Made by a program: the position numbers and the translations under genes. Positions 42,891 to 60,218 of a DNA stretch of 64,000 nt are shown here, piece after piece. The notes beneath the pieces are model-generated. The model was not told where the DNA came from. It did no database searches and worked only from the letters and a program-made list of their open reading frames with translations. How positions within the stretch are numbered: the stretch's first letter is position 1; each line of letters opens with the position of its first letter. The stretch lies in the IMG/VR virus record IMGVR_UViG_3300030102_006934, positions 316,344 to 380,343 of that record; one strand, 5' to 3'.

Positions 42891-45800
42891 GTGATGTCAA
42901 TTAAAAAAATTTTAAAAGAGTATAATAATTTCGATTGGATTAATGATATAAATCCTATTTCCCCACATATAGAAAATATTGTGGGTAAAAAACTACGTCA
43001 TCGAGACAATAACTTAGCACATATACCCAACCACAACGATTTAAGTAAAATAAAAGACGGTGGTGTTCTTTTATTAAAACCCAAGATGGATTATTATTTT
43101 GTTGTGGACCGTATAGACCGTATAACAAATGAGGTTATTATTAAAATATTCCCTAAAAGAAAATCTCGCTACAAACAAGAAGAAGTAAGATATTCAATTA
43201 GTGATATGGAGAATTTAATTCGGTTGGGTATATGGGTTCTTGATGATAGTATAGAAGAATCTGATAATACCATAGTAGAAGAAGAGGAAATAGGGCTAGA
43301 CAATGATGAAAATATATCACAAGAAGAAATAGATTATATTAATAAAGAGTATGGTTCTTTAAGGGATAGGGAAAATATAAAAAACACATTGAAGAACCCA
43401 CCTTTTAACTTCAATCCGTCCCAAATAAGAAATGGAAGTATCAACACTTATGTTGTGAGATATATAGTTTCTAAAGAAGGAAATAAAGGTAATAAAGATG
43501 TTTTTGTAAAAGAAAAATTTGAAAATTTTTTGGATAAAGTAAATAGTGTATTGGGCACTAATTACAAAAACTCTAGTGGATATAGGGAATTGACATCATC
43601 AGCAAAACCCAAAAAACAAGGGGCTTTGACTCAACGACAAATATTGGTACACAACTTTAATATGAGTAAGGAAGCAATTGAAAGTTGGTTACAAGTAAAA
43701 CAAAATAACCAAAGAGTTGTTGGACAAAAGAACCTAAGACAGCCAAAAACACAGGAAGAGATAGATACTAACCTTACTAAACTCATAGATTATTTAGCTA
43801 AAACTAAACTTAGTGAAATTATTTTATCATTAGATGGTTTACTAGAAAAGTTTGGGTTAAGTCGTGATGATAAAAGTAAAAATGACGCAATCCCCAAAAA
43901 AGATGAGATTGTTAAACAATTAATTGATGAATTTGAACAGAACTTAAGGGTGAAGTTTTATTTAAATTACATTGGTGGTAATGTTGTAGATCAAAGGTCT
44001 AACTGGGCAACATTTGTGAGGTATTCTAAAGCAATTAAAAAAATTATAGAAAACAGTGAACTACCAAAAGACCTCGGAATAGACTTTAAAAATAGTAAGA
44101 ACTATAAAAGGTTAAAGGATTTATTTGAAAAAATAAAAGAAAAAGAATACTGTTACATTTTTAGTGAAAACTGTGAATTATCCAGTTCTGATATAGAAAA
44201 AGTTATGGACTTTTTCGGTAAAAAATATGAAAATAGTTTTTTAACTAAAGGATTTAAAAAAGATACTAATAGGGGTCTTGAGTCTAGGATTCATAATTTA
44301 GATATGGTGGGGTATAACTTTTCTGAAAAAATAAAATCAAAAGATTTTAATGCGGACGAAATTTATAATTATATAACTAAAAACATTAAAAATTATTTAG
44401 ATAATACAGAAACTATTGTTAAGTATGATTTATTGGCTAAAGGGGAAAGAAAAGACAATAAGGGTAATATTATAATACCCAACGAAGGTAAAGTTGAGGT
44501 AAAGGATATAAACTATTTAGATAGTTACTTATCAGAATTTTTAGCATCTCCAGTCAAAAGAGCGGAATATGGGGTGAAAGATGACCCTAAATATTTAAAA
44601 AGGTATAATGAAGTGGTTGATAGGGTTTATACCTATTTAACAGAAAATTATAAAGAAATCATTATTAGTAAAATTCAAGAAGGTTTAGAAGGTATAATAA
44701 TATCTAATAATATCTATGTCCCTAATAAAAAAAATAACATTAAATTTTATTTATCCGATATTGGTCGAAGTAACCCCAAAAAACAAAGAAGAATTACTGT
44801 TAGATACGAGATTAATGAAAGTAACTGGGAAAATTTTTATATAATAGATGATAATGGTGTGTTACAACCACTAGATGAAGACACCAAAAAAGTGTTAAGA
44901 TATAAAGGTGAAAAAATTTCTGAATCTAACGACATTGATTGGATAAAAGATGCTTATAAAACAGAATGGACTTTTGATGATATCGCACAATTATATTATG
45001 CTGGTGACGTTGAAGCTGTTAAAATTGTTAGGTTTAAAGATTTAAAACACTTAAGGGGAGCTATTGAGTGGTGTCTTGGTGAGGATGCGGAGTTAGATTT
45101 TTTCAATGAATTCAAGGTCGGTAATATACGCCAGATACTTTCTACCAATTTAGACATTGACGGCCAAATATCACACAATAATTTTACAGTGAGTGATTTA
45201 GATTGTGGTTGGTGTCTAGATGACCCAGATTCCATTGGTTATAATTGTAATGAAAGACCTAAAACCATGTCTCTACGGGTTGATGGTCAAATATTCGAAG
45301 ACTCTTTTGCCTTCAGTGAGGATTGGGTTGAGTTAGAACCTATTATGAAATCAGATGAAATAAATGAATCTTCTGAGGGGTTAGAATGGATTAGGGATGT
45401 GGTACCTGACGACAGTGTAAGATTTGATAAAGATAAATTATATTACTTTAACCCACCACTAAACCATGATGAGATAATAAATTTAATGAATAGAATACCC
45501 AATGAAAGTAAGTATACACAAACCAAAAAATGGTTTGATAGGGTTTTTGGGGGTAGAGCACCACAGAGGTATATGACTTATTTTAATGTAGATGGTGGTG
45601 ATCGAAATGATGGTAAATTTTATGTTAGTGGTTGGTGTAGTGAAACTCGTTGGTCTCAGGTTAATGATGAGTATTATCCACACTCTGAACCAGTAAATGG
45701 TAGGGATGAATTTTTTGGACACTATAAAATTTCAGAAGAAAAGGTAAGTGAATCTAAAGACGATTTTGATTGGGCGAGGGACGTTAATCCAAATCCTTTT

Positions 45801-47627
45801 CACGGTACAAACATTAAATTCTATATAAACGCTACACCAACTCAAGAACAAGCTGAAAAGATTTGGGATTTATTAATTGATGCGGGTGTAACTGATTCGG
45901 CTAAAGTTAAAGAATACAACAGGGTGTATAAGTTGATGAGGGGTAGAGGTACATTTATGATGATTGACCACGATGGTGACTTTATGTATAATATTGATAA
46001 CTTATCTGAGTACGTTAGAAATGGAAGAATTAGTTCTGGTAATATTATTAATTTTACAGACATTTTTTCAGATGATGAACCTGATGATTATATAAAAGAA
46101 TCTAAAGATTTTGAATGGTTAGATGATGTACCACTAACTCTTAACCATATTTTTAATGAGTTAAGTATTGGTGATGAGTTAACCCTAAAGGGCAATACTT
46201 ATGGTGCTCATCTAAATATGCAACATTTTAAATACACAGAACCTTTTACAATTACGATACAATCAATCGGACCTAGATTAGAAGATTCTGATTTTAAAAT
46301 ATCAGTTAGAGAAAAGGAAGCTATAGTTAACTTAGGTATAAAACATAAGGGTGAACTACTTAAAAAGTACCCAAAATTTCATGTGTTTTCAAATAATTCG
46401 TTTTTTCCAGAGGATGGCGATTTAGAAGTTGTTTCTTGGGTTAAATCTGAAGATAAATTAGAAGAGTCCTCACAAGATTGGGATTGGGCCGAAACTCCAG
46501 AAGTAATCATAGGGGGTAAAAACGGTTTACCAAAAGAAAGTGTTCCTTTAGGTACTAAAGTGGTGAATTATGATGGTGACATATTCACCATAGAGGATAT
46601 TACTGGAGGGTATATGGATTTCCAACATGTATGGGGTAGTGACCAAAAGACAGCTTGGTTGGGTCCTAAAGATGATGAGGATAATAAAAATTGGCATAAT
46701 ACCTTATGGTTAAGAAAAGCAACTTCTGAAGATTTAAATGAATCTGAAAATGAGTGGGACTGGGCAAAGAATATAGTTACTGATGGTTTAGATCTTAAGT
46801 TTAGTGAAGGGATGTGTTTACTTAGGAAAGACGGTACTCGATGGTTGGTAGTGGATACACCGAAACACGCTTCAAAATCCACAACATTAGTTTGGCTTCA
46901 ACGAACTCACACAAATGGGATAGATATAACTGAAAAAAAGAGGCCAATCTCACCCTTTAGAGAATCAACTCTTTCTAGGCAAATACAAAGTGGTGATATA
47001 ACAATCTGTAATAAACCTTTAAAGGAATCCGATGACTTTGATTGGGTTGATGATATTGATGCTGTAGACCCTAAAAAACCTAAGCCTGGTTATGTTTATA
47101 ATTGGAGTGGTTATAGTGATATAATTGATGATGATGAGGTGCTAACCGATACCATAATTATTACAAAAATAAAGGGTGATGACGAATGGGTTAGTGGGGG
47201 TTTTGAAATTATGTTTGTTCCAGAAGGTACTTCTCCCAATTCCGAAGATGCGGTTCATAAACAAGTTTTTGATAAATTAGTTGATAAGGGTGAAATTCAA
47301 TTTCTTCACAAATTAGATACTGATATGGTTAATGAATCTAAAGATGATTTTGATTGGGTTAGAGATACAATACCTGTTGAACTAGAAGACCCTCAATCTT
47401 GGGTCGGTAGGTCCTTTGGTTATGGTCCTGAAATAGTAGATAACATGGATGGAGCGGAACTAGCAATGGGTGATGATAAGGAATATTATACTATAGATAG
47501 TATTGATGGAAATGGTAATTTAGCTTTAACGAGGCACCACCCCAATAGAAGAAGCATGAGTGATAGTAGTACTTCAGTTATTTCTTTAAGAGATTATATT
47601 AGTAATGGTAGATGGGTATGGGTTTAA
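42891..47627 (+). CDS. 1578-aa modular xE-DFDW polyprotein
   Basis: ATATTTAT at 42878; leader plus 8 internal xE-S..[DE]W linkers. Confidence 0.9.
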   Translation: MMSIKKILKEYNNFDWINDINPISPHIENIVGKKLRHRDNNLAHIPNHNDLSKIKDGGVLLLKPKMDYYFVVDRIDRITNEVIIKIFPKRKSRYKQEEVRYSISDMENLIRLGIWVLDDSIEESDNTIVEEEEIGLDNDENISQEEIDYINKEYGSLRDRENIKNTLKNPPFNFNPSQIRNGSINTYVVRYIVSKEGNKGNKDVFVKEKFENFLDKVNSVLGTNYKNSSGYRELTSSAKPKKQGALTQRQILVHNFNMSKEAIESWLQVKQNNQRVVGQKNLRQPKTQEEIDTNLTKLIDYLAKTKLSEIILSLDGLLEKFGLSRDDKSKNDAIPKKDEIVKQLIDEFEQNLRVKFYLNYIGGNVVDQRSNWATFVRYSKAIKKIIENSELPKDLGIDFKNSKNYKRLKDLFEKIKEKEYCYIFSENCELSSSDIEKVMDFFGKKYENSFLTKGFKKDTNRGLESRIHNLDMVGYNFSEKIKSKDFNADEIYNYITKNIKNYLDNTETIVKYDLLAKGERKDNKGNIIIPNEGKVEVKDINYLDSYLSEFLASPVKRAEYGVKDDPKYLKRYNEVVDRVYTYLTENYKEIIISKIQEGLEGIIISNNIYVPNKKNNIKFYLSDIGRSNPKKQRRITVRYEINESNWENFYIIDDNGVLQPLDEDTKKVLRYKGEKISESNDIDWIKDAYKTEWTFDDIAQLYYAGDVEAVKIVRFKDLKHLRGAIEWCLGEDAELDFFNEFKVGNIRQILSTNLDIDGQISHNNFTVSDLDCGWCLDDPDSIGYNCNERPKTMSLRVDGQIFEDSFAFSEDWVELEPIMKSDEINESSEGLEWIRDVVPDDSVRFDKDKLYYFNPPLNHDEIINLMNRIPNESKYTQTKKWFDRVFGGRAPQRYMTYFNVDGGDRNDGKFYVSGWCSETRWSQVNDEYYPHSEPVNGRDEFFGHYKISEEKVSESKDDFDWARDVNPNPFHGTNIKFYINATPTQEQAEKIWDLLIDAGVTDSAKVKEYNRVYKLMRGRGTFMMIDHDGDFMYNIDNLSEYVRNGRISSGNIINFTDIFSDDEPDDYIKESKDFEWLDDVPLTLNHIFNELSIGDELTLKGNTYGAHLNMQHFKYTEPFTITIQSIGPRLEDSDFKISVREKEAIVNLGIKHKGELLKKYPKFHVFSNNSFFPEDGDLEVVSWVKSEDKLEESSQDWDWAETPEVIIGGKNGLPKESVPLGTKVVNYDGDIFTIEDITGGYMDFQHVWGSDQKTAWLGPKDDEDNKNWHNTLWLRKATSEDLNESENEWDWAKNIVTDGLDLKFSEGMCLLRKDGTRWLVVDTPKHASKSTTLVWLQRTHTNGIDITEKKRPISPFRESTLSRQIQSGDITICNKPLKESDDFDWVDDIDAVDPKKPKPGYVYNWSGYSDIIDDDEVLTDTIIITKIKGDDEWVSGGFEIMFVPEGTSPNSEDAVHKQVFDKLVDKGEIQFLHKLDTDMVNESKDDFDWVRDTIPVELEDPQSWVGRSFGYGPEIVDNMDGAELAMGDDKEYYTIDSIDGNGNLALTRHHPNRRSMSDSSTSVISLRDYISNGRWVWV

Positions 47628-47844: not shown

Positions 47845-48888
47845 ATGGATTCAGAAAAAAAAGAAGGTAAAGTTTCAAACGATTTTGATTGGGTAAAAGA
47901 TGTTAAAGCAAGACTACCTTTAAGAGTTGGTACTTGTTTAACTTTTAAACACTCAAAAGAGGAAGAAGAATGGGTAGAAGATGAATACGGTAACATGATT
48001 GACCACGGTAAAATGAACTGGCATATCACAAGTAAGTTTATAGATGTGTATAATGACGATAAACCAACCTTTTCAATGGTAGCCACAGATAGAATGGGTG
48101 AAAGTCGTCAAATTTTTATGGAAGTGGAAAAGGTTAAAGAATTGTATGAGGAAGGTGTTTATGAGCCTTGTAAAAAACAGCCATACCTAAAAAGAGTAAT
48201 GAAAGAAGAATCCGATGATTTTGATTGGGTTGAGGATGTTTCCAACACTTTACCCAGAAATGATAATTGGATGTTAATTAACGATGTAGACCCTGATTCT
48301 TTGGAAGTGTCTAAAGATATACAAAATTACCTATTCAGTAAGGGTTTGTTTTGGAATACAGGTAGAAAAACCCCATTGTATCAACGTATATTAGCGATAC
48401 ACTATGTCTTACCACACCGAATACATAGTGGTAGCTTTACCTACGTACCTAATAGTATACCTCATGAAAAAGCAAGATTAGAAGTTGAGTATGATAGGGA
48501 AGAACTTCTCAAAAAAGGAAAACATGTTTACTATTGGAGTCAATTAAAACCAGAAAAAGATAATATCAAAGAATCAAAAGATTTAAAATGGATCGAAGAT
48601 ATTGATTTTACAGACCCTAAAAAACCCAAACGTGGTTATGTTTATGATTGGAAGGGTTATAGTGATAGTGTTGCTAATTTAGGATATCAGTTAGGTGAAA
48701 TTGGGGATATTATAATTATTAAAGAACCATTTAGCAACCCAAGTCATAGGTACCCCAAGTGGAAGATGCATTACTTCGATACTTTAAATTTTGATTGGGG
48801 TGAAGAATTAGATGGTATTTCTGAAATTGAATTCAATAGAAAAATAGATGACGGTACCATAACCTACCTATACAAGTTAGGTCAATAA
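47845..48888 (+). CDS. Three-module xE-DFDW polyprotein
   Basis: NDFDWV, MKEESDDFDWV, IKESKDLKWI. Confidence 0.85.
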   Translation: MDSEKKEGKVSNDFDWVKDVKARLPLRVGTCLTFKHSKEEEEWVEDEYGNMIDHGKMNWHITSKFIDVYNDDKPTFSMVATDRMGESRQIFMEVEKVKELYEEGVYEPCKKQPYLKRVMKEESDDFDWVEDVSNTLPRNDNWMLINDVDPDSLEVSKDIQNYLFSKGLFWNTGRKTPLYQRILAIHYVLPHRIHSGSFTYVPNSIPHEKARLEVEYDREELLKKGKHVYYWSQLKPEKDNIKESKDLKWIEDIDFTDPKKPKRGYVYDWKGYSDSVANLGYQLGEIGDIIIIKEPFSNPSHRYPKWKMHYFDTLNFDWGEELDGISEIEFNRKIDDGTITYLYKLGQ

Positions 48889-48966: not shown

Positions 48967-49626
48967 ATGGGAAAAAATAATAATAAAGCAAACGATGCTT
49001 GGCAAGTATTAAGAATTCAAGGAGAATTTGTAAAAGGTTTCGACCAATTATCAGAGTTAGGTCCTTGTATATCCATATTTGGTTCAGCTAGAACTAAGAA
49101 AGATAACAAATATTATAATAATGCAAAAGAACTTGCTGACTTATGTACTAAAAATGGTTTTGGTGTGATAACTGGTGGTGGTCCTGGAATTATGGAAGCG
49201 GCAAATAAAGGAGCTTATAAGTCAGACAAACCAAGTGTTGGTTTATCAATACAACTACCTTTTGAGGCCAAAGAAAACGATTATATAGATAATTTAGTGG
49301 AATGTAGGTATTTTTTTACTAGAAAAGTTTTCTTCTTAAAATACGCACAAGCATTTGTTGGATATCCGGGTGGGTTTGGGACTTTAGATGAGTTATTTGA
49401 AACCCTAACACTTATTCAATGTGGTCACATGAGAAAAGTACCAGTAGTTCTTGTCGGTGTAAGTTATTGGAGACCACTTATATATTGGTTAAGAGATACA
49501 ATGTATAAGGAGGAGGGTAATATTTCTGAAAAGGACTTCGATTTATTTACAATAGTAGATACCCCACAAGAAGCTATGGAATACATTTTACAAAAACGAA
49601 AACATCAAACAGATATTAATTTTTAA
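48967..49626 (+). CDS. LOG-family nucleotide monophosphate nucleosidase
   Basis: SIFGSAR, ITGGGPGIMEAAN, PGGFGTLDE. Confidence 0.9.
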   Translation: MGKNNNKANDAWQVLRIQGEFVKGFDQLSELGPCISIFGSARTKKDNKYYNNAKELADLCTKNGFGVITGGGPGIMEAANKGAYKSDKPSVGLSIQLPFEAKENDYIDNLVECRYFFTRKVFFLKYAQAFVGYPGGFGTLDELFETLTLIQCGHMRKVPVVLVGVSYWRPLIYWLRDTMYKEEGNISEKDFDLFTIVDTPQEAMEYILQKRKHQTDINF

Positions 49627-49643
49627 ACAAAAACAAAACAAAT

Positions 49644-50096
49644 ATGAAAAAATTTATCAAAACCCCAATAATTATACTAATTATGATTCCATTCTTAATG
49701 TTTGGACAATCGAAACAACAATTTATAGAAACTAACATAGGATTAGCCGCCATAGGAAGTTACAAAGTATCTGATATGTACTATCCAGGTTGTAGTGTTC
49801 TATATGGTCAAACAAGACATATGTCAGAGAATAGTGTCTTTGAGTGGGAAGTAGGTCTAGCTGTTCCATGTGTTGTAACGGGTAAAGCTGGAGTTGGATT
49901 TGGTACTATTAAAAATAACTTTATGATATCAATTAGACCTTGGCCTTTAACAGTTGGTCCACAACTAAGAATAGGTGGTCTTGTTGCATCATTTGAATTC
50001 GGTACAGAGAGTGAAATAAGCTTTGGTGCGGGATTAATTGGTACAGTTGGGTATAGATTCAACCTAAAAAGTAAAAAGAAAAATAATCTTAAATAA
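49644..50096 (+). CDS. Exported, probable outer-membrane beta-rich protein
   Basis: Signal peptide ending FG-Q; alternating hydrophobic strands; GYRF near the C-terminus. Confidence 0.6.
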   Translation: MKKFIKTPIIILIMIPFLMFGQSKQQFIETNIGLAAIGSYKVSDMYYPGCSVLYGQTRHMSENSVFEWEVGLAVPCVVTGKAGVGFGTIKNNFMISIRPWPLTVGPQLRIGGLVASFEFGTESEISFGAGLIGTVGYRFNLKSKKKNNLK

Positions 50097-50102
50097 AAAA
50101 AA

Positions 50103-50384
50103 ATGATTAAAAATAAGTATAAAAAGGAGAAAAAAGAACTAATAGATTCCCTAAATAAAATGGGTAGACACGTTGCGGTATTAGAAATCAAACTTGTTAG
50201 TACATCTAAGGTTGAGGATAATTTAATTTATGAGTGTACATACACGGAGAGTGGTAAAATAAATGTTGTACCAGTAATAGCAAAAGACGTTACACAAGCT
50301 CTAGCAAAATTAGAACAATTCACACAACTAGGTATACCAGAAGATGTTTTAAAATATATGTTAGGTAGTGAGAGGTATTCTTAG
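50103..50384 (+). CDS. Hypothetical protein
   Basis: 93-aa ORF. Confidence 0.7.
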   Translation: MIKNKYKKEKKELIDSLNKMGRHVAVLEIKLVSTSKVEDNLIYECTYTESGKINVVPVIAKDVTQALAKLEQFTQLGIPEDVLKYMLGSERYS

Positions 50385-50619
50385 TTTAGTCATACTGTTA
50401 AGTAGTTGTAGTGTTGTTGAATATTATAGTGTAGATGGTGAATCTACTTTCGTTGGAATTACGAAAAGTGAAAACCATTTTCATGAACATTTTGTAGATA
50501 GTACAAATAACTCACACCATTGTTTTTATTATCACGACACAACAACATATAGGTGGAAAATAGTGGTTGATAATATAGTGAAAAGAAAAAAATTAGTTAG
50601 ATATAAATTAAAAAAATGA
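50368..50619 (+). CDS. Small lipoprotein
   Basis: Lipobox LSS-C; His-rich core. Confidence 0.6.
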   Translation: MRGILSLVILLSSCSVVEYYSVDGESTFVGITKSENHFHEHFVDSTNNSHHCFYYHDTTTYRWKIVVDNIVKRKKLVRYKLKK

Positions 50620-51842
50620 GGGTATTTAAATTTGTAATAATTTTATTAGTGAGTTTAACAAGTTATTCACAAAATTTTTGTAAAACTGACGAACACAATA
50701 GGTTATTTTTTGAAAAAAATATAAACCACTATAAAGGGGTTGAGGAAAAAATAAAAAAATATATTAAGAATAATCAAAATAAAGATGGTGACGAAGATAT
50801 AATAACCATACCAGTGGTCTTTCATATAATATGGCAAGAAGATAAACAAAATTTAGATGAAGAAGTTGTAATAGACCAGTTACTATTATTAAATGAGTGT
50901 TTTAACGCTGAAAATTCAGACACATCTATTTTGACTGACACTTTAAAAGACTGGGTTGGTAACTTCGGTATTCGTTTTGAGTTGGCTCACGAAGACCCTA
51001 ATGGTTTTATGACTAATGGTATAACTAGAACTAAAACAATTAATCCACATTTCTCATCATATAATAATCTAGTTAAAAAATCAAACTATGGTAAAGAACC
51101 GTGGCCGACTGATAGGTATTTAAATATATGGGTTTGTAACTTATTAGATGACTTATATGGTTACGCTCAATTTCCAGGTGGACCAATTGAAACTGATGGT
51201 GTTGTGGTCGATTGGCAAACTGTAGGTAATGGTATATACCCTTGGACTTACCCTAGTTTGGAAAATTTAGCTTGTGGTAAAGTCTTGGTACATGAAATTG
51301 GCCATTGGTTAAATTTATATCACCCATGGGGGAACGAACCTTTTGGTTGTGGTGACGACTACATACCAGAAACTGGCTTACAAGATGGACCTATTTATTC
51401 AAGTGACCAATGTTTTGATACTTTGATTAGTACATGTAATTCTATAGATAGAGTTTTTGTTAAAACTTATATGGACTATTCAGGTTGTGACTGTATGGTA
51501 ACATTTACTACAAACCAAGTTGTACGGGGTTTGGCCTCACTACATACCTATAGAGAAAGTATGATAAATAATTACAAACCAAAACCTAATATTAATTATC
51601 TAGAAGAAACAAGGATAAACCCAACCCTAACTAAGGGTTTATTCTACATACATCTACCAAATTATAGTGGAATAATTGAAGTATTTATTTTTGATATTGG
51701 TGGTAAATTGATAGAATATAGGTCTTTACACGGAAAAACAATTAATATTTTCGATATTAGTAATAATGGTAATGGTATGTATTTTATAAAATTAACCCAT
51801 AACAATTTTATATCAACAAAAAAAATATTAAAATATGACTAA
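50616..51842 (+). CDS. M43 (ulilysin/pappalysin-like) zinc metalloprotease with T9SS C-terminal domain
   Basis: Signal peptide, CKTDE Cys-switch, TIPVVFHII, HEIGHWLNLYH, Met-turn YMDY; CTD ...IFDIGGK...GMYFIKL...TKKILK. Confidence 0.9.
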   Translation: MRVFKFVIILLVSLTSYSQNFCKTDEHNRLFFEKNINHYKGVEEKIKKYIKNNQNKDGDEDIITIPVVFHIIWQEDKQNLDEEVVIDQLLLLNECFNAENSDTSILTDTLKDWVGNFGIRFELAHEDPNGFMTNGITRTKTINPHFSSYNNLVKKSNYGKEPWPTDRYLNIWVCNLLDDLYGYAQFPGGPIETDGVVVDWQTVGNGIYPWTYPSLENLACGKVLVHEIGHWLNLYHPWGNEPFGCGDDYIPETGLQDGPIYSSDQCFDTLISTCNSIDRVFVKTYMDYSGCDCMVTFTTNQVVRGLASLHTYRESMINNYKPKPNINYLEETRINPTLTKGLFYIHLPNYSGIIEVFIFDIGGKLIEYRSLHGKTINIFDISNNGNGMYFIKLTHNNFISTKKILKYD

Positions 51843-52041
51843 TATGGATAATAATATTGATAAAAAATTACTATCTAAAAAAGATGTTATGAACTTACTA
51901 GATACTGTCTTTAAAGATAAAATTTTTAATTTTAGGGGGTCCAACAAATTTAAAGTTTCAGCTAGTAAAGAATATGAGAAGTTGTGTCTCACTTTAGATG
52001 ATTTAGTTAGACAAAAAGTAGAAGAAAATAAACAAAAATAA
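51835..52041 (+). CDS. Hypothetical protein
   Basis: 68-aa ORF. Confidence 0.6.
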   Translation: MTNMDNNIDKKLLSKKDVMNLLDTVFKDKIFNFRGSNKFKVSASKEYEKLCLTLDDLVRQKVEENKQK

Positions 52042-52082
52042 CTAAATAGATTTTTTGTTTATAAAAGATATTTATTAACGTA

Positions 52083-52715
52083 ATGAGTATTAAAAAAATT
52101 ATAAGGGAAGAGTTAGAGTCAATGGTTTATTCGGATAAGATTAAGCCCAAACACAAAAAAAAGATGAGTCGTGAACTTAAGTTTTTTAAAGACTTCCCTA
52201 TTCGAAAATTTGCTAATATACCACCACCTAAAAACGAATCCATAGAAACTGAAGAAGAAATAGATTATTTAGAGAGTATACCAGTTAGTAAAAAATTTGT
52301 GGACGTGGCAGATGAATTCGAAGATTACTTTGGTGAATTTCTTAAAATTAGAGGATTAAAATACCCAAAGAAAGAATTATCAGAATTAATAGAAGAGACT
52401 AAAACAATAATTCTAAAATTAAAATACCACTATAACAGACCAAGACCATACCAAATAGCTAATGAAAAAAATATGTCTTTGAATTCTGAAGATTTAGCAT
52501 CAGCTAAAACACCCTCTTACCCATCTGGACACGCAACACAAGGTACTTTTATTAGTCGTTATTTAGCCGATTTATACCCAAAATACGAGAAAGAACTTTT
52601 AGACATGGGTGAGGATATCGCTTTTAGTAGAAATATGGCAAAAGTACATTACCCAAGTGACACTGAGTTAGGTAAAATACTTGGTAATGATTTGTATGAT
52701 TATCTAGGAAAATAG
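52083..52715 (+). CDS. PAP2/haloperoxidase-superfamily phosphatase with leader
   Basis: KYHYNRPRP, PSYPSGH, SRNMAKVHYPSD; leader MSIKKIIREELE; ATATTTAT at 52068. Confidence 0.85.
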   Translation: MSIKKIIREELESMVYSDKIKPKHKKKMSRELKFFKDFPIRKFANIPPPKNESIETEEEIDYLESIPVSKKFVDVADEFEDYFGEFLKIRGLKYPKKELSELIEETKTIILKLKYHYNRPRPYQIANEKNMSLNSEDLASAKTPSYPSGHATQGTFISRYLADLYPKYEKELLDMGEDIAFSRNMAKVHYPSDTELGKILGNDLYDYLGK

Positions 52716-52773
52716 TAAAGATAAATCAATCATAATAAAATAGAGTTTTTACACCACCATAATATTTATTAGT

Positions 52774-54060
52774 ATGAACTTAAAAACCATCATTAAGTCA
52801 GAACTATTATTTGAATCTTTGGAAGATAGGTTAAAATCTGCCTATCGAAAATGGTGTAAAAAAATGAAATTAAAAGACCAAGACACCCTTGATGATATTA
52901 AGAATGCTGATGGTTATGTAGAAGAACTTGATGTATATGCAGAAGAATTTGAGGACCCTCACAGTAAAATGTACCAAAAAGTTGAAGAACTATACGCCAA
53001 GGAAGATTATGAAGGTATACATAATTTGATAGCTGACCACCAATGTAGGGATTTGTATATTGGTGCAGTATTTAAAGATTGGCTTTCTTATAGGAACCTA
53101 ACAAAAAGTTCAGATATATTCCAATATAAAAGTGAGAGAGAACTTGCGGGGGAGTTAGAGGACGCAAAAGAGAAATCATTTACCAAAAAGTTAAAGAAAG
53201 CTTCAGAGGGTGAAGATTTTGATAAAATTTGGGAGAATGATGATATGTTGATTGTTGTCCCTAAGTCACACGTTGGAGCTTGTAAATTTGGTCAGGGTAC
53301 TAAATGGTGTACCGCTAGTAAAACTGGTAATTACTTTGATCCTTATTATAAAAAAGGTATCTTATATAGGGTACTACAAAAAAATGATAATTATAAAGAA
53401 TTGTTCTCTAATTTTCAGATGAATAATAAGTTAGTCTCTGACATTGAAAACCTAAGTAAAGTCTCCATAAATCTAAGAAGAAAACAAGACTCTATGTCTA
53501 TGGTGGATAAAGTAGATTATGCTTTTGGAAATAAATCAACTTTAGAGTTTTTAAACTCCTTACCTAGTGAAGGTTATAAAGCCATTAAAAATTACCATAG
53601 TTTAAACGAACAAAGTATAAAAAATATTATAAGAGAAGAGTTGGATGACTTTGATTGGGTTAAAAATACTAACCCAATTCCAAATGAAATTTTAGACATA
53701 AGTAAGTACCGAGATGGGAATTATAAATTTTGGTTGGGAGATATATCAAAAGAAACTCAACTACAAATATTGGATTATATAAGTGAGGTGATTAGGGGTG
53801 ACGATAATTTACATACCAATGGTACATTGTATGAAGTTCGTAAAAGGGTGGATAAAAATTTAGTCTCTATTAATTCACTTTTTTTTGAGATTAAACAGGT
53901 TGGCTTAAAAAAAGGAATAAATTTATCAATAATGGGTTGGTACCCAAATGACCCACATTTTGAAAGAGAAGAAAGATTAGAATATTGTAGAAATTATTTT
54001 TATCAAACGGATGATATAAATTTGTCTGATGTAGATTTGGGGGAACAAAATAAAATTTGA
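52774..54060 (+). CDS. Family A domain fused to an xE-DFDW module
   Basis: ACKFGQGTKWC; internal SIKNIIREELDDFDWV. Confidence 0.85.
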   Translation: MNLKTIIKSELLFESLEDRLKSAYRKWCKKMKLKDQDTLDDIKNADGYVEELDVYAEEFEDPHSKMYQKVEELYAKEDYEGIHNLIADHQCRDLYIGAVFKDWLSYRNLTKSSDIFQYKSERELAGELEDAKEKSFTKKLKKASEGEDFDKIWENDDMLIVVPKSHVGACKFGQGTKWCTASKTGNYFDPYYKKGILYRVLQKNDNYKELFSNFQMNNKLVSDIENLSKVSINLRRKQDSMSMVDKVDYAFGNKSTLEFLNSLPSEGYKAIKNYHSLNEQSIKNIIREELDDFDWVKNTNPIPNEILDISKYRDGNYKFWLGDISKETQLQILDYISEVIRGDDNLHTNGTLYEVRKRVDKNLVSINSLFFEIKQVGLKKGINLSIMGWYPNDPHFEREERLEYCRNYFYQTDDINLSDVDLGEQNKI

Positions 54061-54183: not shown

Positions 54184-54564
54184 ATGAAGAAAATAATAAA
54201 AAGAATTTTAAGAGAAGAATTCAATGATTTTGATTGGATTAAGGACACTGGTGGTGATAAATATGTCCCTATAAGAGTTATTCTCAATAAGCTTGATGAG
54301 ACTTATTATGGGGAAAATCCTAATGAAATTCTAGAATACGAAAATGTTTTCAAAGTACCATTAGAAGATTTTGTGAGAATTACAAATAGTACGAATTATA
54401 CAGACGAGGAATATGAGATTATTACCCCAATAGGTCATAATTTACTTAATTATGCTTATGATTGTGAACTTAATCCATTTGTTTGTAAAGAAATTGATGA
54501 TTTTTTCGATACGGAGGTTGACGAATATATTGAGGGTATAGTATTATTGGATGATAATTTTTAA
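54184..54564 (+). CDS. xE-DFDW family protein
   Basis: ATATTTAT at 54172; ILREEFNDFDWI. Confidence 0.8.
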   Translation: MKKIIKRILREEFNDFDWIKDTGGDKYVPIRVILNKLDETYYGENPNEILEYENVFKVPLEDFVRITNSTNYTDEEYEIITPIGHNLLNYAYDCELNPFVCKEIDDFFDTEVDEYIEGIVLLDDNF

Positions 54565-54571: not shown

Positions 54572-57157
54572 ATGAGAGTTTTAATAAATAAAATATTAAA
54601 AGAGTTACATAGTAAAAGTATTATTAAAAAAGTACTTAATGAAAATTACCAGGACGAAAATATATCACAAGAAGAAAAAAATAGTATCATTGATGAGTAT
54701 GGGTGGTTAAAAAATGAAGAAAAAATTGAAAGTATTTTAAAAAACCCGCCTTTTTCAAAGAAAACTAGGACCTATAGAATAGTTAATAGCTATAGGGTTA
54801 GGTATATTATATCTAAGGAAATAAAAAAAAATGTATATTTTAATAACGCGGGTTGGGCTAACTTTGTAAAGAAGGTGGGTCAAGTAATAGGCTTAAAAAT
54901 AAAAGCAACAGATGATACCGTTTCAAAATTCTTTAAAAATATCGATGAGACCAAAAAATATGGTTTAGAGGGGAAACATTTAGAAGATAGAAAAAATACT
55001 TCCACGGAGTTAAAAAAGAATTGGAATAAAATAGACCCTGAAGTATACGAAGAAAGAATAGAACATACTATTAATTATTTAAAAAATACCAATATTACAG
55101 AATTGGAAAATTCAAAGACAAGCTTATTGACACGGTTTTCTTTAATACTAAGATACCAAGAAGAAATAATGAACTATCTTATTGATTATTTTAAAGATGA
55201 CCCAAAAATAAGGTTTTATCTTAGTTATCTTAATAAAGGTGGAAAATATTGGGGTACACTTGTAAAATACCAAAAAAAACTAAGTAATGTGCTAGACAAC
55301 CCTAATATTAGTGAAAAATATGATGACATTGTAGAAATGAAAAAATCATATAAGGCTATTATTGAAGAAGAAGCACCTTATTTGTTTAACGAAAAGGGTA
55401 ATTTTACTAAAAAAGAAAAGGAAATATTAGTAAATTGGTTTAATTTAACAAGTTATGAACATTCTTTCACAGAATTAGGGTTTTATAAACCAGAAGGAAA
55501 AGGTGCGGAGTCTTTAATACATAATCTACACAGTGCAGGTATTAGATACAATGTTAGTAATGAAATAAAAAATAATACTGATACTGATGACGTTGTAAAA
55601 TTTGTGATAAACAATATTATTAATTATTTAAAAAACACAAAAGATATAATTAAATACGATATTGTTAGTAAAGATACTATAAAAGATATTAATGGAAATG
55701 AAGTGATTCCAAAGGGTAGTAAAATAGAGGTTAAAGACATTAAGAATAGTGATAGTTATTTTGCTGAATTTTTATCATCACCTGTTAAAAGCGGTTCAGA
55801 AATATTGAATAATGAAGTTTATAGAGGAAGGTATAATAAAATAATAGAAGGAATTTATAATTGGTTATCTAACGATAGTGTGGGTATGGGTATTAAAAAT
55901 ACTATTAAGTGGTTAATGACTAACGATTTAGAAGGTATAATAATATCTAATAATATCTATGTCCCTAATAAAGATGGTAACATTGAATTTTATTTATCTA
56001 ATATTGGTCAAAACAACCCAAAAAATCATATAAGAATTACAATAAGATATAATATTAATTTAGATAAATCGAAAAATTTCTATAAAATAGGAGATGGTAA
56101 GTGGAAATTAAACGGTAAAGCATCCAAAAAAGGTATTCTTTACCCACTACCAGAAACAGAAAGTAATTTAATAAGACCCATAGAGAAACAAATTTATAAA
56201 ACAATAGAAGAATCTAAGACTAAATCTACAATAAATAAAATATTAAAAGAAGAATTCGATGATTTCGATTGGATTAAGGACACTTTTACCGAACTAAACA
56301 AAAGTGAAAAATGGATGTTGGTTAATGATATAGACCGTGAGAGTATATCGGAAGGTCATGAAATACAAAAATATCTATTTGACTTGGGTTATAGTTGGGG
56401 TACTGGTGATTTAAAAAATTCACTAAAAGATTTTTGTATCTATACAATATATCATTTCGGAAATATTAGAAATGATGAACACTTATATTACGGAGATGGT
56501 TGTAGAAGTGCTGATATAAGAATTTCAGATAAAGATATTAAAAGTGGTGAACATATAGTTTATTATTGGAGTGAGTTAAAACCTAAAACAATAAAGGAAG
56601 AAAACGATTTTAAATGGATTGATGAACCAAGAAACAACCCATTAGATGGTTTAAGATTAACAACACCTATGGGTAGAGCTGGTAGTGGTGGTAGTGGTTT
56701 AACAATAAAAGACGATGGTGGTACATATGTTACTGTTACCTCTTCTAACGGTTCTAGTGAATATCATAGGGGTACTGTTAAAAACTTTATAAGAATGGGT
56801 ATTTGGTTACCAATAGATTCTATGAATGAATCAGATGATTTTGATTGGGCGAAAGAAATAAAACCAACGTTGAATGTTGCCTTTGAAGAAGGTCTGATTA
56901 AAGCGGGTGATATTTTGACACTTTCTGGGGAACTAATGGATGATGAAGGAAGACACACAATACAAGTTTCAGATTTTAAAATAAAAATAGATCAAATATA
57001 TGGGCCTAATAGTGTATATAGAGACATCACCAGTTCTCTTTTCATACCACTACAAGAAAAATATTTCAAACACTTAGGTTATTATGAAAATGAATTTAAT
57101 GATTCTATCAGATTTGCTAAGAAAGATGGTGAGTTAGAAATATTAGATATATCTTAA
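54572..57157 (+). CDS. 861-aa modular xE-DFDW polyprotein
   Basis: Large module homologous to module 2 of 42891; ILKEEFDDFDWI, IKEENDFKWI, MNESDDFDWA. Confidence 0.9.
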   Translation: MRVLINKILKELHSKSIIKKVLNENYQDENISQEEKNSIIDEYGWLKNEEKIESILKNPPFSKKTRTYRIVNSYRVRYIISKEIKKNVYFNNAGWANFVKKVGQVIGLKIKATDDTVSKFFKNIDETKKYGLEGKHLEDRKNTSTELKKNWNKIDPEVYEERIEHTINYLKNTNITELENSKTSLLTRFSLILRYQEEIMNYLIDYFKDDPKIRFYLSYLNKGGKYWGTLVKYQKKLSNVLDNPNISEKYDDIVEMKKSYKAIIEEEAPYLFNEKGNFTKKEKEILVNWFNLTSYEHSFTELGFYKPEGKGAESLIHNLHSAGIRYNVSNEIKNNTDTDDVVKFVINNIINYLKNTKDIIKYDIVSKDTIKDINGNEVIPKGSKIEVKDIKNSDSYFAEFLSSPVKSGSEILNNEVYRGRYNKIIEGIYNWLSNDSVGMGIKNTIKWLMTNDLEGIIISNNIYVPNKDGNIEFYLSNIGQNNPKNHIRITIRYNINLDKSKNFYKIGDGKWKLNGKASKKGILYPLPETESNLIRPIEKQIYKTIEESKTKSTINKILKEEFDDFDWIKDTFTELNKSEKWMLVNDIDRESISEGHEIQKYLFDLGYSWGTGDLKNSLKDFCIYTIYHFGNIRNDEHLYYGDGCRSADIRISDKDIKSGEHIVYYWSELKPKTIKEENDFKWIDEPRNNPLDGLRLTTPMGRAGSGGSGLTIKDDGGTYVTVTSSNGSSEYHRGTVKNFIRMGIWLPIDSMNESDDFDWAKEIKPTLNVAFEEGLIKAGDILTLSGELMDDEGRHTIQVSDFKIKIDQIYGPNSVYRDITSSLFIPLQEKYFKHLGYYENEFNDSIRFAKKDGELEILDIS

Positions 57158-58971: not shown

Positions 58972-59178
58972 ATGGTTGATTATATTTTAATAGGATTAGT
59001 TCTAACATTTATTTTAGAGATAACGACAATTTATTATGCTGACAAGATTATGGTTATGAGGGATGATGAACCTTTCATTCGGTTCTCTATGTTGGAGAGG
59101 TTATTTGTAGTAGTAATATGGCCAGCTGTGGTGGGAATTTTTTTATATGTATTATTTAAAAAGGAAAATCATGAGTAG
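58972..59178 (+). CDS. Small two-TM protein
   Basis: ATG 58972 follows the promoter cassette. Confidence 0.65.
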   Translation: MVDYILIGLVLTFILEITTIYYADKIMVMRDDEPFIRFSMLERLFVVVIWPAVVGIFLYVLFKKENHE

Positions 59179-59248
59179 AGAATTATTTGTATTGATTTAT
59201 TTTTCCATAGCTATATTAGCGTTTATAATTGTAAAACAGAAAAAATGA
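59171..59248 (+). CDS. 25-aa single-TM peptide
   Basis: MSRELFVLIYFSIAILAFIIVKQKK; overlaps both neighbours. Confidence 0.5.
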   Translation: MSRELFVLIYFSIAILAFIIVKQKK

Positions 59249-59481
59249 AAGCAAAAGATAAGGCAAATGAGTTAGGTAACAAATTTTACCAAGGAAGTGT
59301 CTTCGATTATGATAAAGAAGAACACGTAGAAGAAAAGAAAAAGGCAAAAAAACGTGCTCATGTTTGTATAGATGTATTTATAGACTTTCTTCACAGACAA
59401 ACAGATAAACAAACAAAACTAAAAGGCGTTACACCAGTAGAGTATTGGGAAAAAGTCAAAGAAGAAGTGTATAATTTATAA
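59245..59481 (+). CDS. Conserved phage hypothetical protein
   Basis: MKAKDKANEL...YWEKVKEE. Confidence 0.7.
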   Translation: MKAKDKANELGNKFYQGSVFDYDKEEHVEEKKKAKKRAHVCIDVFIDFLHRQTDKQTKLKGVTPVEYWEKVKEEVYNL

Positions 59482-59499
59482 ACCAAAACAAAGAAGATA

Positions 59500-59598
59500 A
59501 TGAAAGATAAACACAAAGCATTTGTATATGGATTTATACTTGCTAGTATAATGTATTTTATAGCAGGTTGTATGATAATAGGTGTATATTTTAAATAA
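59500..59598 (+). CDS. 32-aa single-TM peptide
   Basis: Follows the repeat motif; AFVYGFILASIMYFIAGCMIIGVYF. Confidence 0.6.
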   Translation: MKDKHKAFVYGFILASIMYFIAGCMIIGVYFK

Positions 59599-59616
59599 CT
59601 AAAAACATAAACAAAG

Positions 59617-60004: not shown

Positions 60005-60077
60005 AGACTTTGATAAGTGGGAAGAAAGAGCAAAGAAAAACACAGAAATCATTGAGCAACAACAAACCAAAACAAAG

Positions 60078-60176: not shown

Positions 60177-60218
60177 TGAATACAAGGTATTTTTTATACT
60201 TAGATAATATTTATTAAT

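What the first reader, a model, noticed from the sequence alone, without database searches (positions are those of the whole stretch)
50616..51842. Phage-encoded protease addressed to the host type IX secretion system
Seen: Sec signal, M43 catalytic domain and a C-terminal 75-aa segment with the type A CTD pattern (INPT..KGLFYI...VFIFDIGGKLI...IFDIS...GMYFIKL....TKKILK). It lies with a predicted outer-membrane protein (49644) and a lipoprotein (50368). Established: T9SS is Bacteroidota-specific and exports CTD-bearing cargo to the surface. Inference: the phage uses T9SS to display or release a protease that could clip phage receptors or gliding adhesins (superinfection exclusion, avoiding progeny re-adsorption) or digest matrix.
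Basis: partly seen in the sequence, partly recalled or inferred. Interest (0 to 1): 0.65.

Follow-up and report, generated by a model that had tools for sequence, protein, structure and literature searches.

The report
Phage-borne secreted T9SS metalloprotease zymogen
A 380-kb marine phage carries an intact, self-inhibited zinc protease with both export signals that Bacteroidota use to send proteins to the cell surface, and it belongs to a lineage of such proteases found only in phage-like DNA, so these phages probably make the infected cell export a viral protease.

Summary
ORF 50616..51842 (+), 408 aa, has four parts:
- a Sec signal peptide whose predicted cleavage exposes Gln19, as the Bacteroidetes Q-rule requires;
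- a pro-segment whose Cys22 aligns with the cysteine-switch Cys23 of promirolysin;
- an M43B (ulilysin/mirolysin-type) catalytic domain with HEIGHWLNLYH and a YMDY Met-turn;
- a terminal type A T9SS sorting domain that passes both curated HMM cut-offs. In the AF2 model it superposes on a CTD solved inside the Flavobacterium johnsoniae T9SS translocon.

The gene is not host contamination:
- The record is a T4-like tailed phage with a major head protein, portal and baseplate.
- Both flanks belong to phage-specific paralog families.
- An independent Tara scaffold reproduces the locus at 99.85% identity.
- GC and GC3 match the phage.

New here: the protein sits in a strongly supported clade of at least 85 sequences from IMG/VR contigs and phage-like metagenome contigs. 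No member was found in 185,579 prokaryote species genomes (best 41% identity) or in 401 Flavobacteriales genomes (best 42%). The gene occupies different genome positions in related phages, and its CTD is under purifying selection.

The biological role (surface or receptor shaving, or protein scavenging) is untested. Phage-encoded T9SS cargo has precedent (Cryophage, 2020).

The parts
50616..51842 (+). Whole gene: pre-pro-M43B metalloprotease with a type A T9SS C-terminal domain (408 aa plus stop)
   Evidence: ORF. Pfam and NCBIfam. PDB sequence matches to pro-ulilysin (E 1.4e-52) and mirolysin (E 8e-47). AF2 model pLDDT 87.8.
50616..50669 (+). Signal peptide, aa 1-18; predicted SPase I cleavage after Ser18 exposes Gln19 (Bacteroidetes Q-rule)
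   Evidence: Read directly from the sequence. Gln19 is conserved in at least 90% of 39 homologs, and S/G-Q is present in essentially all clade members. Promirolysin also starts at Gln. Q-rule: PMC5837995.
50670..50795 (+). Pro-segment, aa 19-60, with Cys22 (codon 50679-50681) as the candidate cysteine switch
   Evidence: Cys22 is invariant in alignment A1. The profile aligns it to the Cys of 'QRTCGS' in promirolysin and 'QRRCGA' in pro-ulilysin. The Cys23 switch in mirolysin is documented in PMC6949598 and PMC8259862. The model superposes on pro-ulilysin 8cdb (TM 0.86) and promirolysin 6r7v (TM 0.80).
50796..51575 (+). M43B catalytic domain, aa 61-320. Zinc motif HEIGHWLNLYH at aa 226-236 (51291-51323). 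Met-turn and Tyr (YMDY) at aa 285-288.
   Evidence: The motif is identical to ulilysin's. H226, E227, H230, H236, M286, D287 and Y288 are invariant in A1. Foldseek gives ulilysin 2cki a TM of 0.90 and rmsd of 2.1. dN/dS is 0.10 against L135.
51612..51839 (+). Type A T9SS C-terminal sorting domain, aa 333-408, seven beta-strands, ending two residues before the stop
   Evidence: TIGR04183 scores 35.4-38.8 bits against a cut-off of 23; PF18962 scores 30.9-33.9 against 27. The model shows seven strands. Foldseek matches 8glk_D, the NucA CTD in the F. johnsoniae T9SS complex (TM 0.87, rmsd 2.0), and the mirolase CTD 8qb1 (TM 0.74). The profile hits 8glk_D at E 7.8e-7. dN/dS is 0.17 and 0.07.
50368..50619 (+). 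83-aa predicted lipoprotein (lipobox LLSSC); its stop overlaps the protease start by 4 nt. Co-conserved neighbour, functional link unproven.
   Evidence: Sequence. The same gene sits directly upstream of the protease in the 82%-identical relative L135 and in the Tara scaffold L134.
50103..50384 (+). 93-aa protein without an export signal; a conserved upstream neighbour of the protease gene in several phage groups. Function unknown.
   Evidence: Homologs (28-41% identity, phmmer E 3e-19 to 7e-14) lie 0.4-2.7 kb upstream of the protease in L004/L007, L008, L011 and L012, and also in L134 and L135. The Atlas gave no lead.
49644..50096 (+). 150-aa exported beta-rich protein (signal peptide with Gln at +1), possibly a small outer-membrane beta-barrel; one of three paralogs in the phage
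   Evidence: Paralogs lie at genome 88791-89270 and 119452-119940. Atlas features point to Bacteroidota clusters and to the OMP_b-brl, Opacity and DUF2715 families at 0.90-0.91. The fold is not confirmed. The gene is absent from the relative L135.
51835..52041 (+). 68-aa ORF overlapping the protease stop; conserved downstream neighbour in L134 and L135

Best explanation
The gene encodes a secreted zymogen of an ulilysin/mirolysin-type (MEROPS M43B, pappalysin family) zinc endopeptidase. It belongs to the phage itself, a 380-kb T4-like tailed phage whose host is very probably a marine member of the Bacteroidota.

Proposed path:
1. The host Sec system exports the pre-pro-protein.
2. Signal peptidase I cuts after Ser18 and exposes Gln19, as the Bacteroidetes Q-rule predicts.
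3. In the periplasm the enzyme stays latent, because Cys22 of the short pro-segment caps the catalytic zinc held by His226, His230 and His236. This is the cysteine switch known from mirolysin.
4. The terminal 75-residue type A CTD hands the folded zymogen to the host T9SS translocon, which moves it across the outer membrane.
5. The CTD is then removed, and the protein is either released or anchored to the surface.
6. Outside the cell the pro-segment is lost and the protease becomes active.

Shown here: the domain architecture, intact catalytic and latency residues, the CTD fold and HMM membership, phage ownership, membership of a clade found only in phage-like DNA, and purifying selection on the CTD.

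Inferred: the actual export route, activation, and the role. My preferred role is proteolytic remodelling of the infected cell's surface or immediate surroundings. That means shaving T9SS-delivered adhesins or receptors to block superinfection and stop progeny sticking to debris. Extracellular protein scavenging is the main alternative.
For: Architecture and residues:
-.

Fold:
- AF2 model pLDDT 87.8.
- TM 0.90 to ulilysin, 0.86 to pro-ulilysin, 0.80 to promirolysin.
- The CTD gives TM 0.87 to a CTD solved in the F. johnsoniae T9SS complex.

Phage ownership:
- G000 is a 380,343-bp virus record.
- It has a major head protein (phrog_138, E 1e-65), a portal (phrog_213, E 1.5e-56), a tape measure and baseplate wedge proteins.
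- The flanking ORFs have several paralogs elsewhere in the phage.
- The gene's GC is 0.300 and GC3 0.215, against 0.315+-0.027 and 0.22+-0.031 for the phage.
- The independent Tara scaffold L134 matches window 49189-53146 at 99.85% without gaps.

Clade found only in phage-like DNA:
- FastTree of 199 rows puts the query in an 85-row clade (support 99) made of IMG/VR loci and metagenome proteins only.
- IQ-TREE on 83 rows puts 31 clade representatives on one side of a branch, SH-aLRT 99.
- Every context inspected is phage-like.
- The best match in 185,579 species genomes is 29-41% identical. In 401 Flavobacteriales genomes the best is 42% and 203 bits, against 390-960 bits inside the clade.

Mobility:
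- Close relatives L002 and L006 carry the gene 85 kb away in genome terms.
- L014 has it next to the major head gene.
- L005 and L010 have it next to RNR.

Selection:
- dN/dS for the CTD is 0.17 against L135 and 0.07 against L002; for the catalytic domain it is 0.10 against L135.

Host phylum:
- Gln at +1 in most of the phage's SPase I sites.
- Shine-Dalgarno motifs are depleted (1.8-3.4% against a 4.9-7.5% background), with A-rich leaders.
- A clade member was binned into a Flavobacteriaceae MAG.

Background literature:
- Mirolysin is a secretory pappalysin-family protease of Tannerella forsythia whose latency depends on the Cys23 switch (PMC8259862, PMC6949598).
- T9SS and gliding mutants of Flavobacterium resist phages (PMC9804748).
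Against: - There is no experimental or read-level evidence.
- The host is unknown. No cultured relative exists in the phage collection, and the nearest major head protein is 43% identical to that of a Microcystis phage.
- The CTD scores (31-39 bits) are at the low end of what Flavobacteriales cargo show (40-59 bits).
- The query has Cys-Lys instead of the conserved Cys-Gly of the switch.
- The S1' Asp is displaced by one residue, so specificity and even the details of latency may differ.
- In 22 of 79 clade members the CTD-like domain is followed by an extra S-P-Y/F-G tail, in 4 of them with a TM helix. This is atypical for T9SS cargo and hints that the domain may have another use in parts of the clade.
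- No substrate is known.
Confidence: 0.7

Rival explanations
1. Same exported protease, but its role is nutritional. It would act as an auxiliary metabolic gene that digests dissolved or particulate protein around the infected cell and feeds amino acids into the large phage's replication.
For: Marine Flavobacteriia live on extracellular polymer degradation, and 277 of 401 Flavobacteriales genomes searched carry M43 homologs, often several. The gene lies among AMG-like genes, a LOG-family nucleosidase and a PAP2 phosphatase. A canonical terminal type A CTD is compatible with release into the medium.
Against: A diffusible public good gives little return to a single infected cell. Four clade members add a TM anchor after the CTD, and related phages place M43 domains in tail-like modules, in some fused to SprB repeats. 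Both point to action on the cell surface. The host already has its own M43 proteases.
Confidence: 0.25
2. The C-terminal beta-sandwich is not used as a T9SS signal. It would serve as an Ig-like binding or anchoring module, and the protease would act in the periplasm (for example in lysis or envelope remodelling) or travel with the virion.
For: CTD-like Ig folds are common decorations on phage proteins. In 54 of 79 clade members the domain is not at the extreme C-terminus. In L014 the gene lies just downstream of the major head gene. CTD HMM scores are modest.
Against: In the query and its 24 closest kin the domain is terminal. It passes two curated cut-offs and superposes on a translocon-bound CTD at TM 0.87. 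A cleavable signal peptide obeying the Q-rule argues against virion packaging. The phage's presumed packaged proteins carry a different N-terminal leader.
Confidence: 0.1
3. The segment is host DNA, either a chimeric assembly or a recently captured host gene that has no function in the phage.
For: The gene lies 12 kb from the end of a linear scaffold that contains a 10-N gap elsewhere. One clade member is labelled as a Flavobacteriaceae MAG protein.
Against: - Phage paralog families flank the gene on both sides.
- Genes are packed tightly on one strand, with 4-nt overlaps.
- Composition matches the phage.
- An independent Tara scaffold carries the same junctions.
- No cellular genome holds a close relative.
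- The MAG contig is itself phage-like.
- Selection is purifying.
Confidence: 0.02

Closest known systems
Mirolysin of Tannerella forsythia (M43B pappalysin-family protease; PDB 6r7v, 6r7w)
   Same: - It is a secreted protease of a Bacteroidota species.
- After the signal peptide its chain starts at Gln.
- It has a short pro-segment with a zinc-capping cysteine (Cys23 there, Cys22 here).
- It shares the metzincin zinc motif and the YMDY Met-turn.
- The fold superposes at TM 0.80-0.84 (PMC6949598, PMC8259862).
- From my own knowledge, not checked in the papers read here: mirolysin also carries a T9SS C-terminal domain.
   Different: - It is only 34-38% identical to the query.
- It is cellular, not viral.
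- Mirolysin has Arg21 plugging S1' and Asp289 at Met+5. The query has Asn20/Phe21 and Cys at Met+5, with Asp at Met+6.
- The third motif position is Asp in mirolysin and Asn here.
Ulilysin (LysargiNase) of Methanosarcina acetivorans (PDB 2cki, 8cd8)
   Same: This is the best sequence and fold match: E 1.4e-52, TM 0.90, and an identical HEIGHWLNLYH motif. The pro-segment cysteine aligns.
   Different: It is archaeal, has no T9SS CTD, and has the S1' Asp at the canonical position.
Cryophage T9SS cargo genes (Bellas et al. 2020, PMC7468147) and T9SS sorting-domain proteins on gut phage contigs (PMC6949934)
   Same: These are phage genomes encoding proteins with a type A T9SS sorting domain. The authors interpret them as hijacking the host secretion system.
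   Different: The reported cargo are an endoglucanase, a GH39 and a PA14 protein in one phage's variable islands. No protease is among them, no zymogen logic is described, and there is no evidence for a phage-only gene lineage shared by many phages.
Cellular M43-CTD proteins of about 420 aa in Bacteroidia, Chitinophagaceae and Ignavibacteria (loci L042, L043, L048, L071, L090)
   Same: Same domain order and length; they align over residues 1-405.
   Different: They are only 29-33% identical and fall outside the clade found only in phage-like DNA in both trees.

Membership tests
MEROPS M43B / pappalysin-family metzincin (ulilysin, mirolysin) | Profile match above the curated threshold | tested here: met
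   PF05572 scores 48.1 bits against a cut-off of 23. PDB phmmer gives E 1.4e-52 to pro-ulilysin.
MEROPS M43B / pappalysin-family metzincin (ulilysin, mirolysin) | Extended zinc motif HExxHxx(G/N)xxH/D with the catalytic Glu | tested here: met
   HEIGHWLNLYH at residues 226-236. H226, E227, H230 and H236 are invariant in 39 homologs.
MEROPS M43B / pappalysin-family metzincin (ulilysin, mirolysin) | Met-turn followed by Tyr (YMDY) | tested here: met
   M286, D287 and Y288 are invariant; Y285 is conserved in at least 90% of the 39 homologs. Compared with PMC6949598.
MEROPS M43B / pappalysin-family metzincin (ulilysin, mirolysin) | Catalytic-domain fold | tested here: met
   Foldseek TM 0.90 and rmsd 2.1 to 2cki; TM 0.84 to 7od0.
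MEROPS M43B / pappalysin-family metzincin (ulilysin, mirolysin) | N-terminal pro-segment with a Cys-Gly cysteine switch | tested here: inconclusive
   Cys22 is invariant and aligns to the switch Cys of promirolysin and pro-ulilysin. The following residue is Lys, not Gly, in the query; it is Gly in many clade members. Zinc contact could not be measured because model coordinates are not returned.
MEROPS M43B / pappalysin-family metzincin (ulilysin, mirolysin) | Conserved Asp at the bottom of S1' (Met+5), which gives Lys/Arg specificity | tested here: not met
   The query subclade reads YMDYSGCDCM, with Cys at +5 and Asp at +6. Deep subclades keep Asp at +5 and others have none. This affects specificity, not family membership.
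MEROPS M43B / pappalysin-family metzincin (ulilysin, mirolysin) | Zinc-dependent endopeptidase activity | not testable with these tools
   Needs recombinant protein.
T9SS type A cargo (CTD-bearing secreted protein of Bacteroidota) | CTD profile match above the curated cut-offs | tested here: met
   TIGR04183 scores 35.4 and 38.8 bits against 23; PF18962 scores 30.9 and 33.9 against 27.
T9SS type A cargo (CTD-bearing secreted protein of Bacteroidota) | Domain at the extreme C-terminus | tested here: met
   The match ends at residue 404-406 of 408.
T9SS type A cargo (CTD-bearing secreted protein of Bacteroidota) | Seven-stranded Ig-like beta-sandwich | tested here: met
   Seven strands lie between residues 333 and 406 at pLDDT about 90. 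TM is 0.87 to 8glk_D, 0.74 to the mirolase CTD 8qb1 and 0.57 to the RgpB CTD.
T9SS type A cargo (CTD-bearing secreted protein of Bacteroidota) | N-terminal Sec signal peptide | tested here: met
   A basic n-region, an 11-residue hydrophobic core and S-Y-S|Q were seen by inspection and by a heuristic script. No dedicated predictor was available.
T9SS type A cargo (CTD-bearing secreted protein of Bacteroidota) | Producer cell possesses a T9SS | not testable with these tools
   The host is unknown. There are indirect signs of a Bacteroidota host only: the Q-rule, Shine-Dalgarno depletion and MAG binning.
T9SS type A cargo (CTD-bearing secreted protein of Bacteroidota) | T9SS-dependent secretion and CTD removal | not testable with these tools
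   Needs genetics in a T9SS-proficient host and in a T9SS-deficient one.
Phage accessory (moron/AMG-like) gene | Embedded in a bona fide phage genome, with phage genes on both sides | tested here: met
Phage accessory (moron/AMG-like) gene | Locus reproduced in an independent assembly | tested here: met
   L134 matches at 99.85% over 3,958 nt.
Phage accessory (moron/AMG-like) gene | Present in related phages at variable positions | tested here: met
   (L002, L006, L005, L010, L014 compared with G000).
Phage accessory (moron/AMG-like) gene | Expressed during infection | not tested

The most novel reading that the evidence does not exclude
A conserved lineage of cysteine-switch M43B zymogens, found only in phages, is a general effector of large marine Bacteroidota phages. 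The infected cell is made to export it through its own T9SS, and it shaves T9SS-delivered surface adhesins and receptors. This excludes superinfecting phages and frees progeny. The lineage has diversified its S1' pocket and, in some branches, replaced or supplemented the CTD signal with a new S-P-Y/F-G plus TM anchoring signal. That would make T9SS a secretion route routinely co-opted by viruses, and the protease a viral 'receptor-destroying enzyme' in bacteria.
Probability: 0.25. Interest if true: 0.75.

Novelty: new variant of a known kind. Interest (0 to 1): 0.55.

Why it matters
T9SS cargo build the surface of Bacteroidota: adhesins, gliding machinery and degradative enzymes. Loss of T9SS or gliding function is a main route to phage resistance in Flavobacterium (PMC9804748). 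A phage-owned protease sent through that same system would let the virus edit the surface it and its competitors must recognise.

The clade gives a concrete, testable handle. It is a compact 408-aa gene with known catalytic, latency and sorting residues. At least 85 natural variants show a varying specificity pocket and varying C-terminal signals. It offers a sequence marker (Q-rule plus CTD) for assigning uncultured marine jumbo phages to Bacteroidota hosts. It also adds a viral branch to the pappalysin family, whose members (LysargiNase) are used as proteomics reagents.

Tried and rejected
- DNA similarity of 48.9-52.8 kb to deposited phages: no match.
- tblastn of the protease against 50,697 phage records: one weak hit, 25% identity. 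No cultured phage in that collection carries the clade.
- First viral-contig scan with single-sequence patterns found nothing. The alignment-based scan then found 35 loci.
- PHROGs has no family for the protease.
- Bacteroidota promoter pattern TTTG-N17-21-TAnnTTTG: 5 hits against 4.07 expected, not informative.
- Sigma-70-like promoters were at the chance level and no intrinsic terminators were found in 48.8-52.9 kb.
- Type B CTD (TIGR04131): none in the phage. A second weak type A-like hit, in the 1488-aa protein at genome position 32910, is not significant (E 0.05).
- AF2 model of the 150-aa neighbour: pLDDT 37.5, unusable, so no fold search was run.
- Atlas search for the 93-aa neighbour gave no lead (0.76).
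- Host contamination and chimeric assembly were rejected (see the rival explanations).
- Reading Lys/Arg P1' specificity from mirolysin was rejected because the S1' Asp is displaced.
- Complex prediction and the big representative search were not used. The family was already clear and no binding claim is made.
Full report
WHAT IS THERE

The ORF at 50616..51842 on the + strand is real.
- Pfam finds Peptidase_M43 at 48.1 bits (cut-off 23) and the T9SS sorting domain PF18962 at 30.9 bits (cut-off 27).
- NCBIfam finds the type A sorting domain TIGR04183 at 35.4 bits (cut-off 23).
- Six-frame searches of the whole genome give 38.8 and 33.9 bits for the two CTD models and show this is the only CTD in the genome.
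- There is no type B CTD.

Against solved structures, the protein matches pro-ulilysin (E 1.4e-52, residues 27-317) and mirolysin (E 8e-47). The zinc motif HEIGHWLNLYH is letter for letter that of ulilysin. The Met-turn YMDY is invariant or nearly so in an alignment of 39 homologs.

A profile of that alignment extends the match into the pro-segment. The invariant Cys22 aligns with the cysteine of 'QRTCGS' in promirolysin and 'QRRCGA' in pro-ulilysin. In mirolysin that residue (Cys23) caps the zinc and keeps the zymogen latent (PMC6949598, PMC8259862).

An AlphaFold2 model built on the alignment has mean pLDDT 87.8.
- It superposes on ulilysin at TM 0.90, on pro-ulilysin at 0.86 and on promirolysin at 0.80.
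- Its last 76 residues form seven strands. They superpose at TM 0.87 (rmsd 2.0) on the NucA CTD solved inside the Flavobacterium johnsoniae T9SS complex (8glk_D), and at 0.74 on the mirolase CTD.

The N-terminus is a typical Sec signal. Its predicted cleavage site, S-Y-S|Q, leaves Gln at +1. This S/G-Q pair is kept in essentially all clade members. Gln at +1 is the Bacteroidetes Q-rule (PMC5837995).

IS IT THE PHAGE'S OWN GENE?

The window is the last 64 kb of a 380,343-bp IMG/VR virus record. That record encodes a T4-type major head protein (phrog_138, E 1e-65), a portal (E 1.5e-56), a tape-measure protein and baseplate wedge proteins. It also carries eight tRNA genes in the window alone.

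Several lines show the protease gene belongs to it:
- The gene sits in a tightly packed same-strand block with 4-nt start/stop overlaps.
- The ORFs on both sides belong to families with several paralogs elsewhere in the phage.
- Its GC (0.300) and GC3 (0.215) are those of the phage (0.315+-0.027 and 0.22+-0.031).
- A Tara Oceans scaffold assembled independently (L134, 3,981 bp) matches window 49189-53146 at 99.85% without a gap. It has the same gene order, from the LOG gene through to the first flanking phage-family gene.

Host contamination or a chimeric join is therefore very unlikely.

A LINEAGE FOUND ONLY IN PHAGE-LIKE DNA

The word-index search found 2,474 homologs. The closest, at 82% down to about 40% identity, are unnamed metagenome proteins of the same length and mostly the same M43+CTD architecture.

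Every genomic context I opened for them is phage-like: dense small same-strand ORFs, DNA ligase, RecA-like protein, RNR, chaperonins, ClpP. An alignment-based scan of IMG/VR found ten further clade members on viral contigs of 48-160 kb.

By contrast:
- The best match among one genome from each of 185,579 prokaryote species is 29-41% identical.
- Among 401 Flavobacteriales genomes, 277 have M43 homologs, but none exceeds 42% identity or 203 bits. Scores inside the clade are 390-960 bits.

The trees agree:
- In a FastTree of 199 sequences the query falls in an 85-row clade (support 99, stem length 0.45) that contains no cellular genome sequence.
- An IQ-TREE run with a site-heterogeneous model on 83 sequences keeps the 31 clade representatives on one side of a branch, SH-aLRT 99.

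The one clade protein labelled 'Flavobacteriaceae bacterium' lies on a contig that is itself phage-like.

The root is not known, so I do not name a donor.

MOBILITY AND SELECTION

The contigs carrying the gene share other genes with this phage, so they form a loose family of large marine phages. The protease gene, however, moves:
- In L002 and L006 the protease is 70% identical and the flanks are 50-91% identical to genome positions 274.6-290.2 kb. There the gene lies between a PD-(D/E)XK gene and a DruA-like gene, which are adjacent in this phage.
- In L014 it follows the major head gene.
- In L005 and L010 it abuts RNR genes that are 86-92% identical to this phage's.
- The nearest relative, L135 (82% identical), keeps the local order LOG, 93-aa ORF, 83-aa lipoprotein, protease, 68-aa ORF.

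The 93-aa ORF recurs upstream of the protease in four more contigs.

dN/dS is 0.10 for the catalytic domain and 0.17 for the CTD against L135. It is 0.07 for the CTD against L002, though dS is near saturation there. So the sorting domain is maintained by selection, not decaying.

HOST

No cultured relative exists in the phage collection; the best major-head match is 43% identical, to a Microcystis phage. Three independent features point to Bacteroidota:
- The CTD itself.
- The Q-rule, seen in the protease, in the three 150-aa paralogs and in most other predicted SPase I substrates of the phage.
- Depletion of Shine-Dalgarno motifs upstream of 326 ORFs (1.8-3.4% against a 4.9-7.5% background), with A-rich leaders.

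This is inference, not proof.

MECHANISM

The best-supported reading is a pre-pro-enzyme that takes the normal Bacteroidota route:
1. Sec export.
2. Cleavage to expose Gln19.
3. Latency through the Cys22-zinc bond.
4. Recognition of the terminal CTD by the host T9SS.
5. Release or surface attachment.
6. Loss of the pro-segment and activity outside the cell.

The architecture and residues are shown. The route and the activation are inferred by homology with mirolysin and with F. johnsoniae cargo.

The role is open. I favour surface or receptor shaving, for three reasons:
- Three consecutive genes here encode exported products.
- Neighbours of the gene in six other loci also carry signal peptides or lipoboxes.
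- Related phages place M43 domains inside tail or baseplate-like modules, in L020, L024 and L025 fused to SprB repeats.

Protein scavenging is a fair alternative.

Specificity cannot be copied from mirolysin. The S1' aspartate at Met+5 is replaced by Cys, with Asp one residue later. Other subclades keep it or lose it altogether.

COMPARISON WITH WHAT IS KNOWN

As an enzyme it is a member of the M43B pappalysin family. As an export substrate it meets every sequence and fold criterion of type A T9SS cargo.

Mirolysin is the closest cellular analogue. It shares the phylum, the Gln start, the cysteine switch and the fold. By my own knowledge, not checked in the papers read here, mirolysin also carries a T9SS C-terminal domain.

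Phage-encoded T9SS cargo has been reported:
- Three variable genes of 'Cryophage' (an endoglucanase, a GH39 and a PA14 protein) were called a unique occurrence in 2020 (PMC7468147).
- T9SS sorting-domain proteins were noted on gut phage contigs (PMC6949934).
- Q-rule proteins were noted in Porphyromonas phages (PMC10367356).

I found no paper linking Peptidase_M43 with phages. What is new is a conserved clade of zymogen proteases with this addressing, found only in phage-like DNA and spread across many large marine phages. That makes it a new variant of a known kind rather than a new kind.

LIMITS

- There is no expression, secretion or activity data.
- The host is unknown.
- The signal peptide was judged without a dedicated predictor.
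- CTD scores are at the low end of the cellular range.
- Contexts were inspected for a sample of the clade, not all of it.
- The cellular absence rests on species representatives and on a sample of one order.

Noticed in passing
window 42891-47627, 47845-48888, 52774-54060, 54184-54564, 54572-57157; also genome 95-120 kb and 313-347 kb: A 'DFDW box' occurs about 50 times in roughly 25 ORFs of the phage; the shuffled expectation for the loose pattern is 10.6. It sits either at residue 13 behind a shared leader (M-x-I-K-K-I-I-K-E-E) or inside long proteins after L/I/V-x-E-S, up to 7 copies per protein. The L-x-E context recalls T4 prohead-protease sites and capsid-targeting leaders. These could be processed polyproteins or packaged proteins. 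Unexplained.
   Followed up: partly
window 52083-52715: A PAP2-family phosphatase gene (39.7 bits) two genes downstream of the protease starts with the same leader (MSIKKIIREEL) as the DFDW-box proteins, but lacks the box and any signal peptide.
   Followed up: no
window 48967-49626: A LOG / TIGR00730-family Rossmann protein (153 bits; weaker matches to PpnN-type nucleotide nucleosidases) lies directly upstream of the exported-protein cluster. It is 95% identical at the DNA level in the relative L135, while the protease region there is 86% identical.
   Followed up: partly
G000 genome 90703-90712 and window about 59000-64000: The virus record is a scaffold with a 10-N gap. The last 5 kb of the record share mosaic pieces at 95-100% identity (77-340 nt) with the DNA on both sides of that gap. 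This could be a repeat family or a scaffolding artefact.
   Followed up: partly
homologs P0013-P0060 and others (tails listed): In 22 of 79 clade proteins the CTD-like domain is followed by a conserved S-P-Y/F-G motif. In four of them (P0016, P0017, P0019, P0021) a hydrophobic helix and a basic tail also follow. This tripartite look recalls exosortase-type sorting signals and is atypical for T9SS cargo.
   Followed up: partly
L020, L024, L025 (about 9.9-13.3 kb); L021, L022, L026 (about 9.0-11.6 kb); L018, L019 (9884-11917): Other IMG/VR phages carry M43 domains from a different clade. Some are fused into 850-1135-aa proteins that sit between homologs of this phage's genes downstream of its baseplate wedge gene, and three of those carry SprB repeats. 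L018 and L019 encode an M43-fn3-CTD protein whose CTD scores 47 bits.
   Followed up: partly
window 49644-50096; genome 88791-89270 and 119452-119940: Three paralogs of a 150-160-aa exported beta-rich protein share an invariant Gln at the predicted cleavage site. The nearest Atlas clusters are Bacteroidota hypotheticals and small OMP beta-barrel families. The copy next to the protease is missing in the closest relative, L135.
   Followed up: partly
whole G000 genome: Shine-Dalgarno motifs are under-represented upstream of start codons (1.8-3.4% against a 4.9-7.5% background), and positions -14 to -3 are 50-63% A. This fits Bacteroidota-style translation initiation.
   Followed up: yes
window 1642-5273 and 34610-34682: Eight tRNA genes (Glu, Asp, Ser, Met, Leu, Arg, Ala, Gly), seven of them clustered within 3.7 kb.
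   Followed up: no
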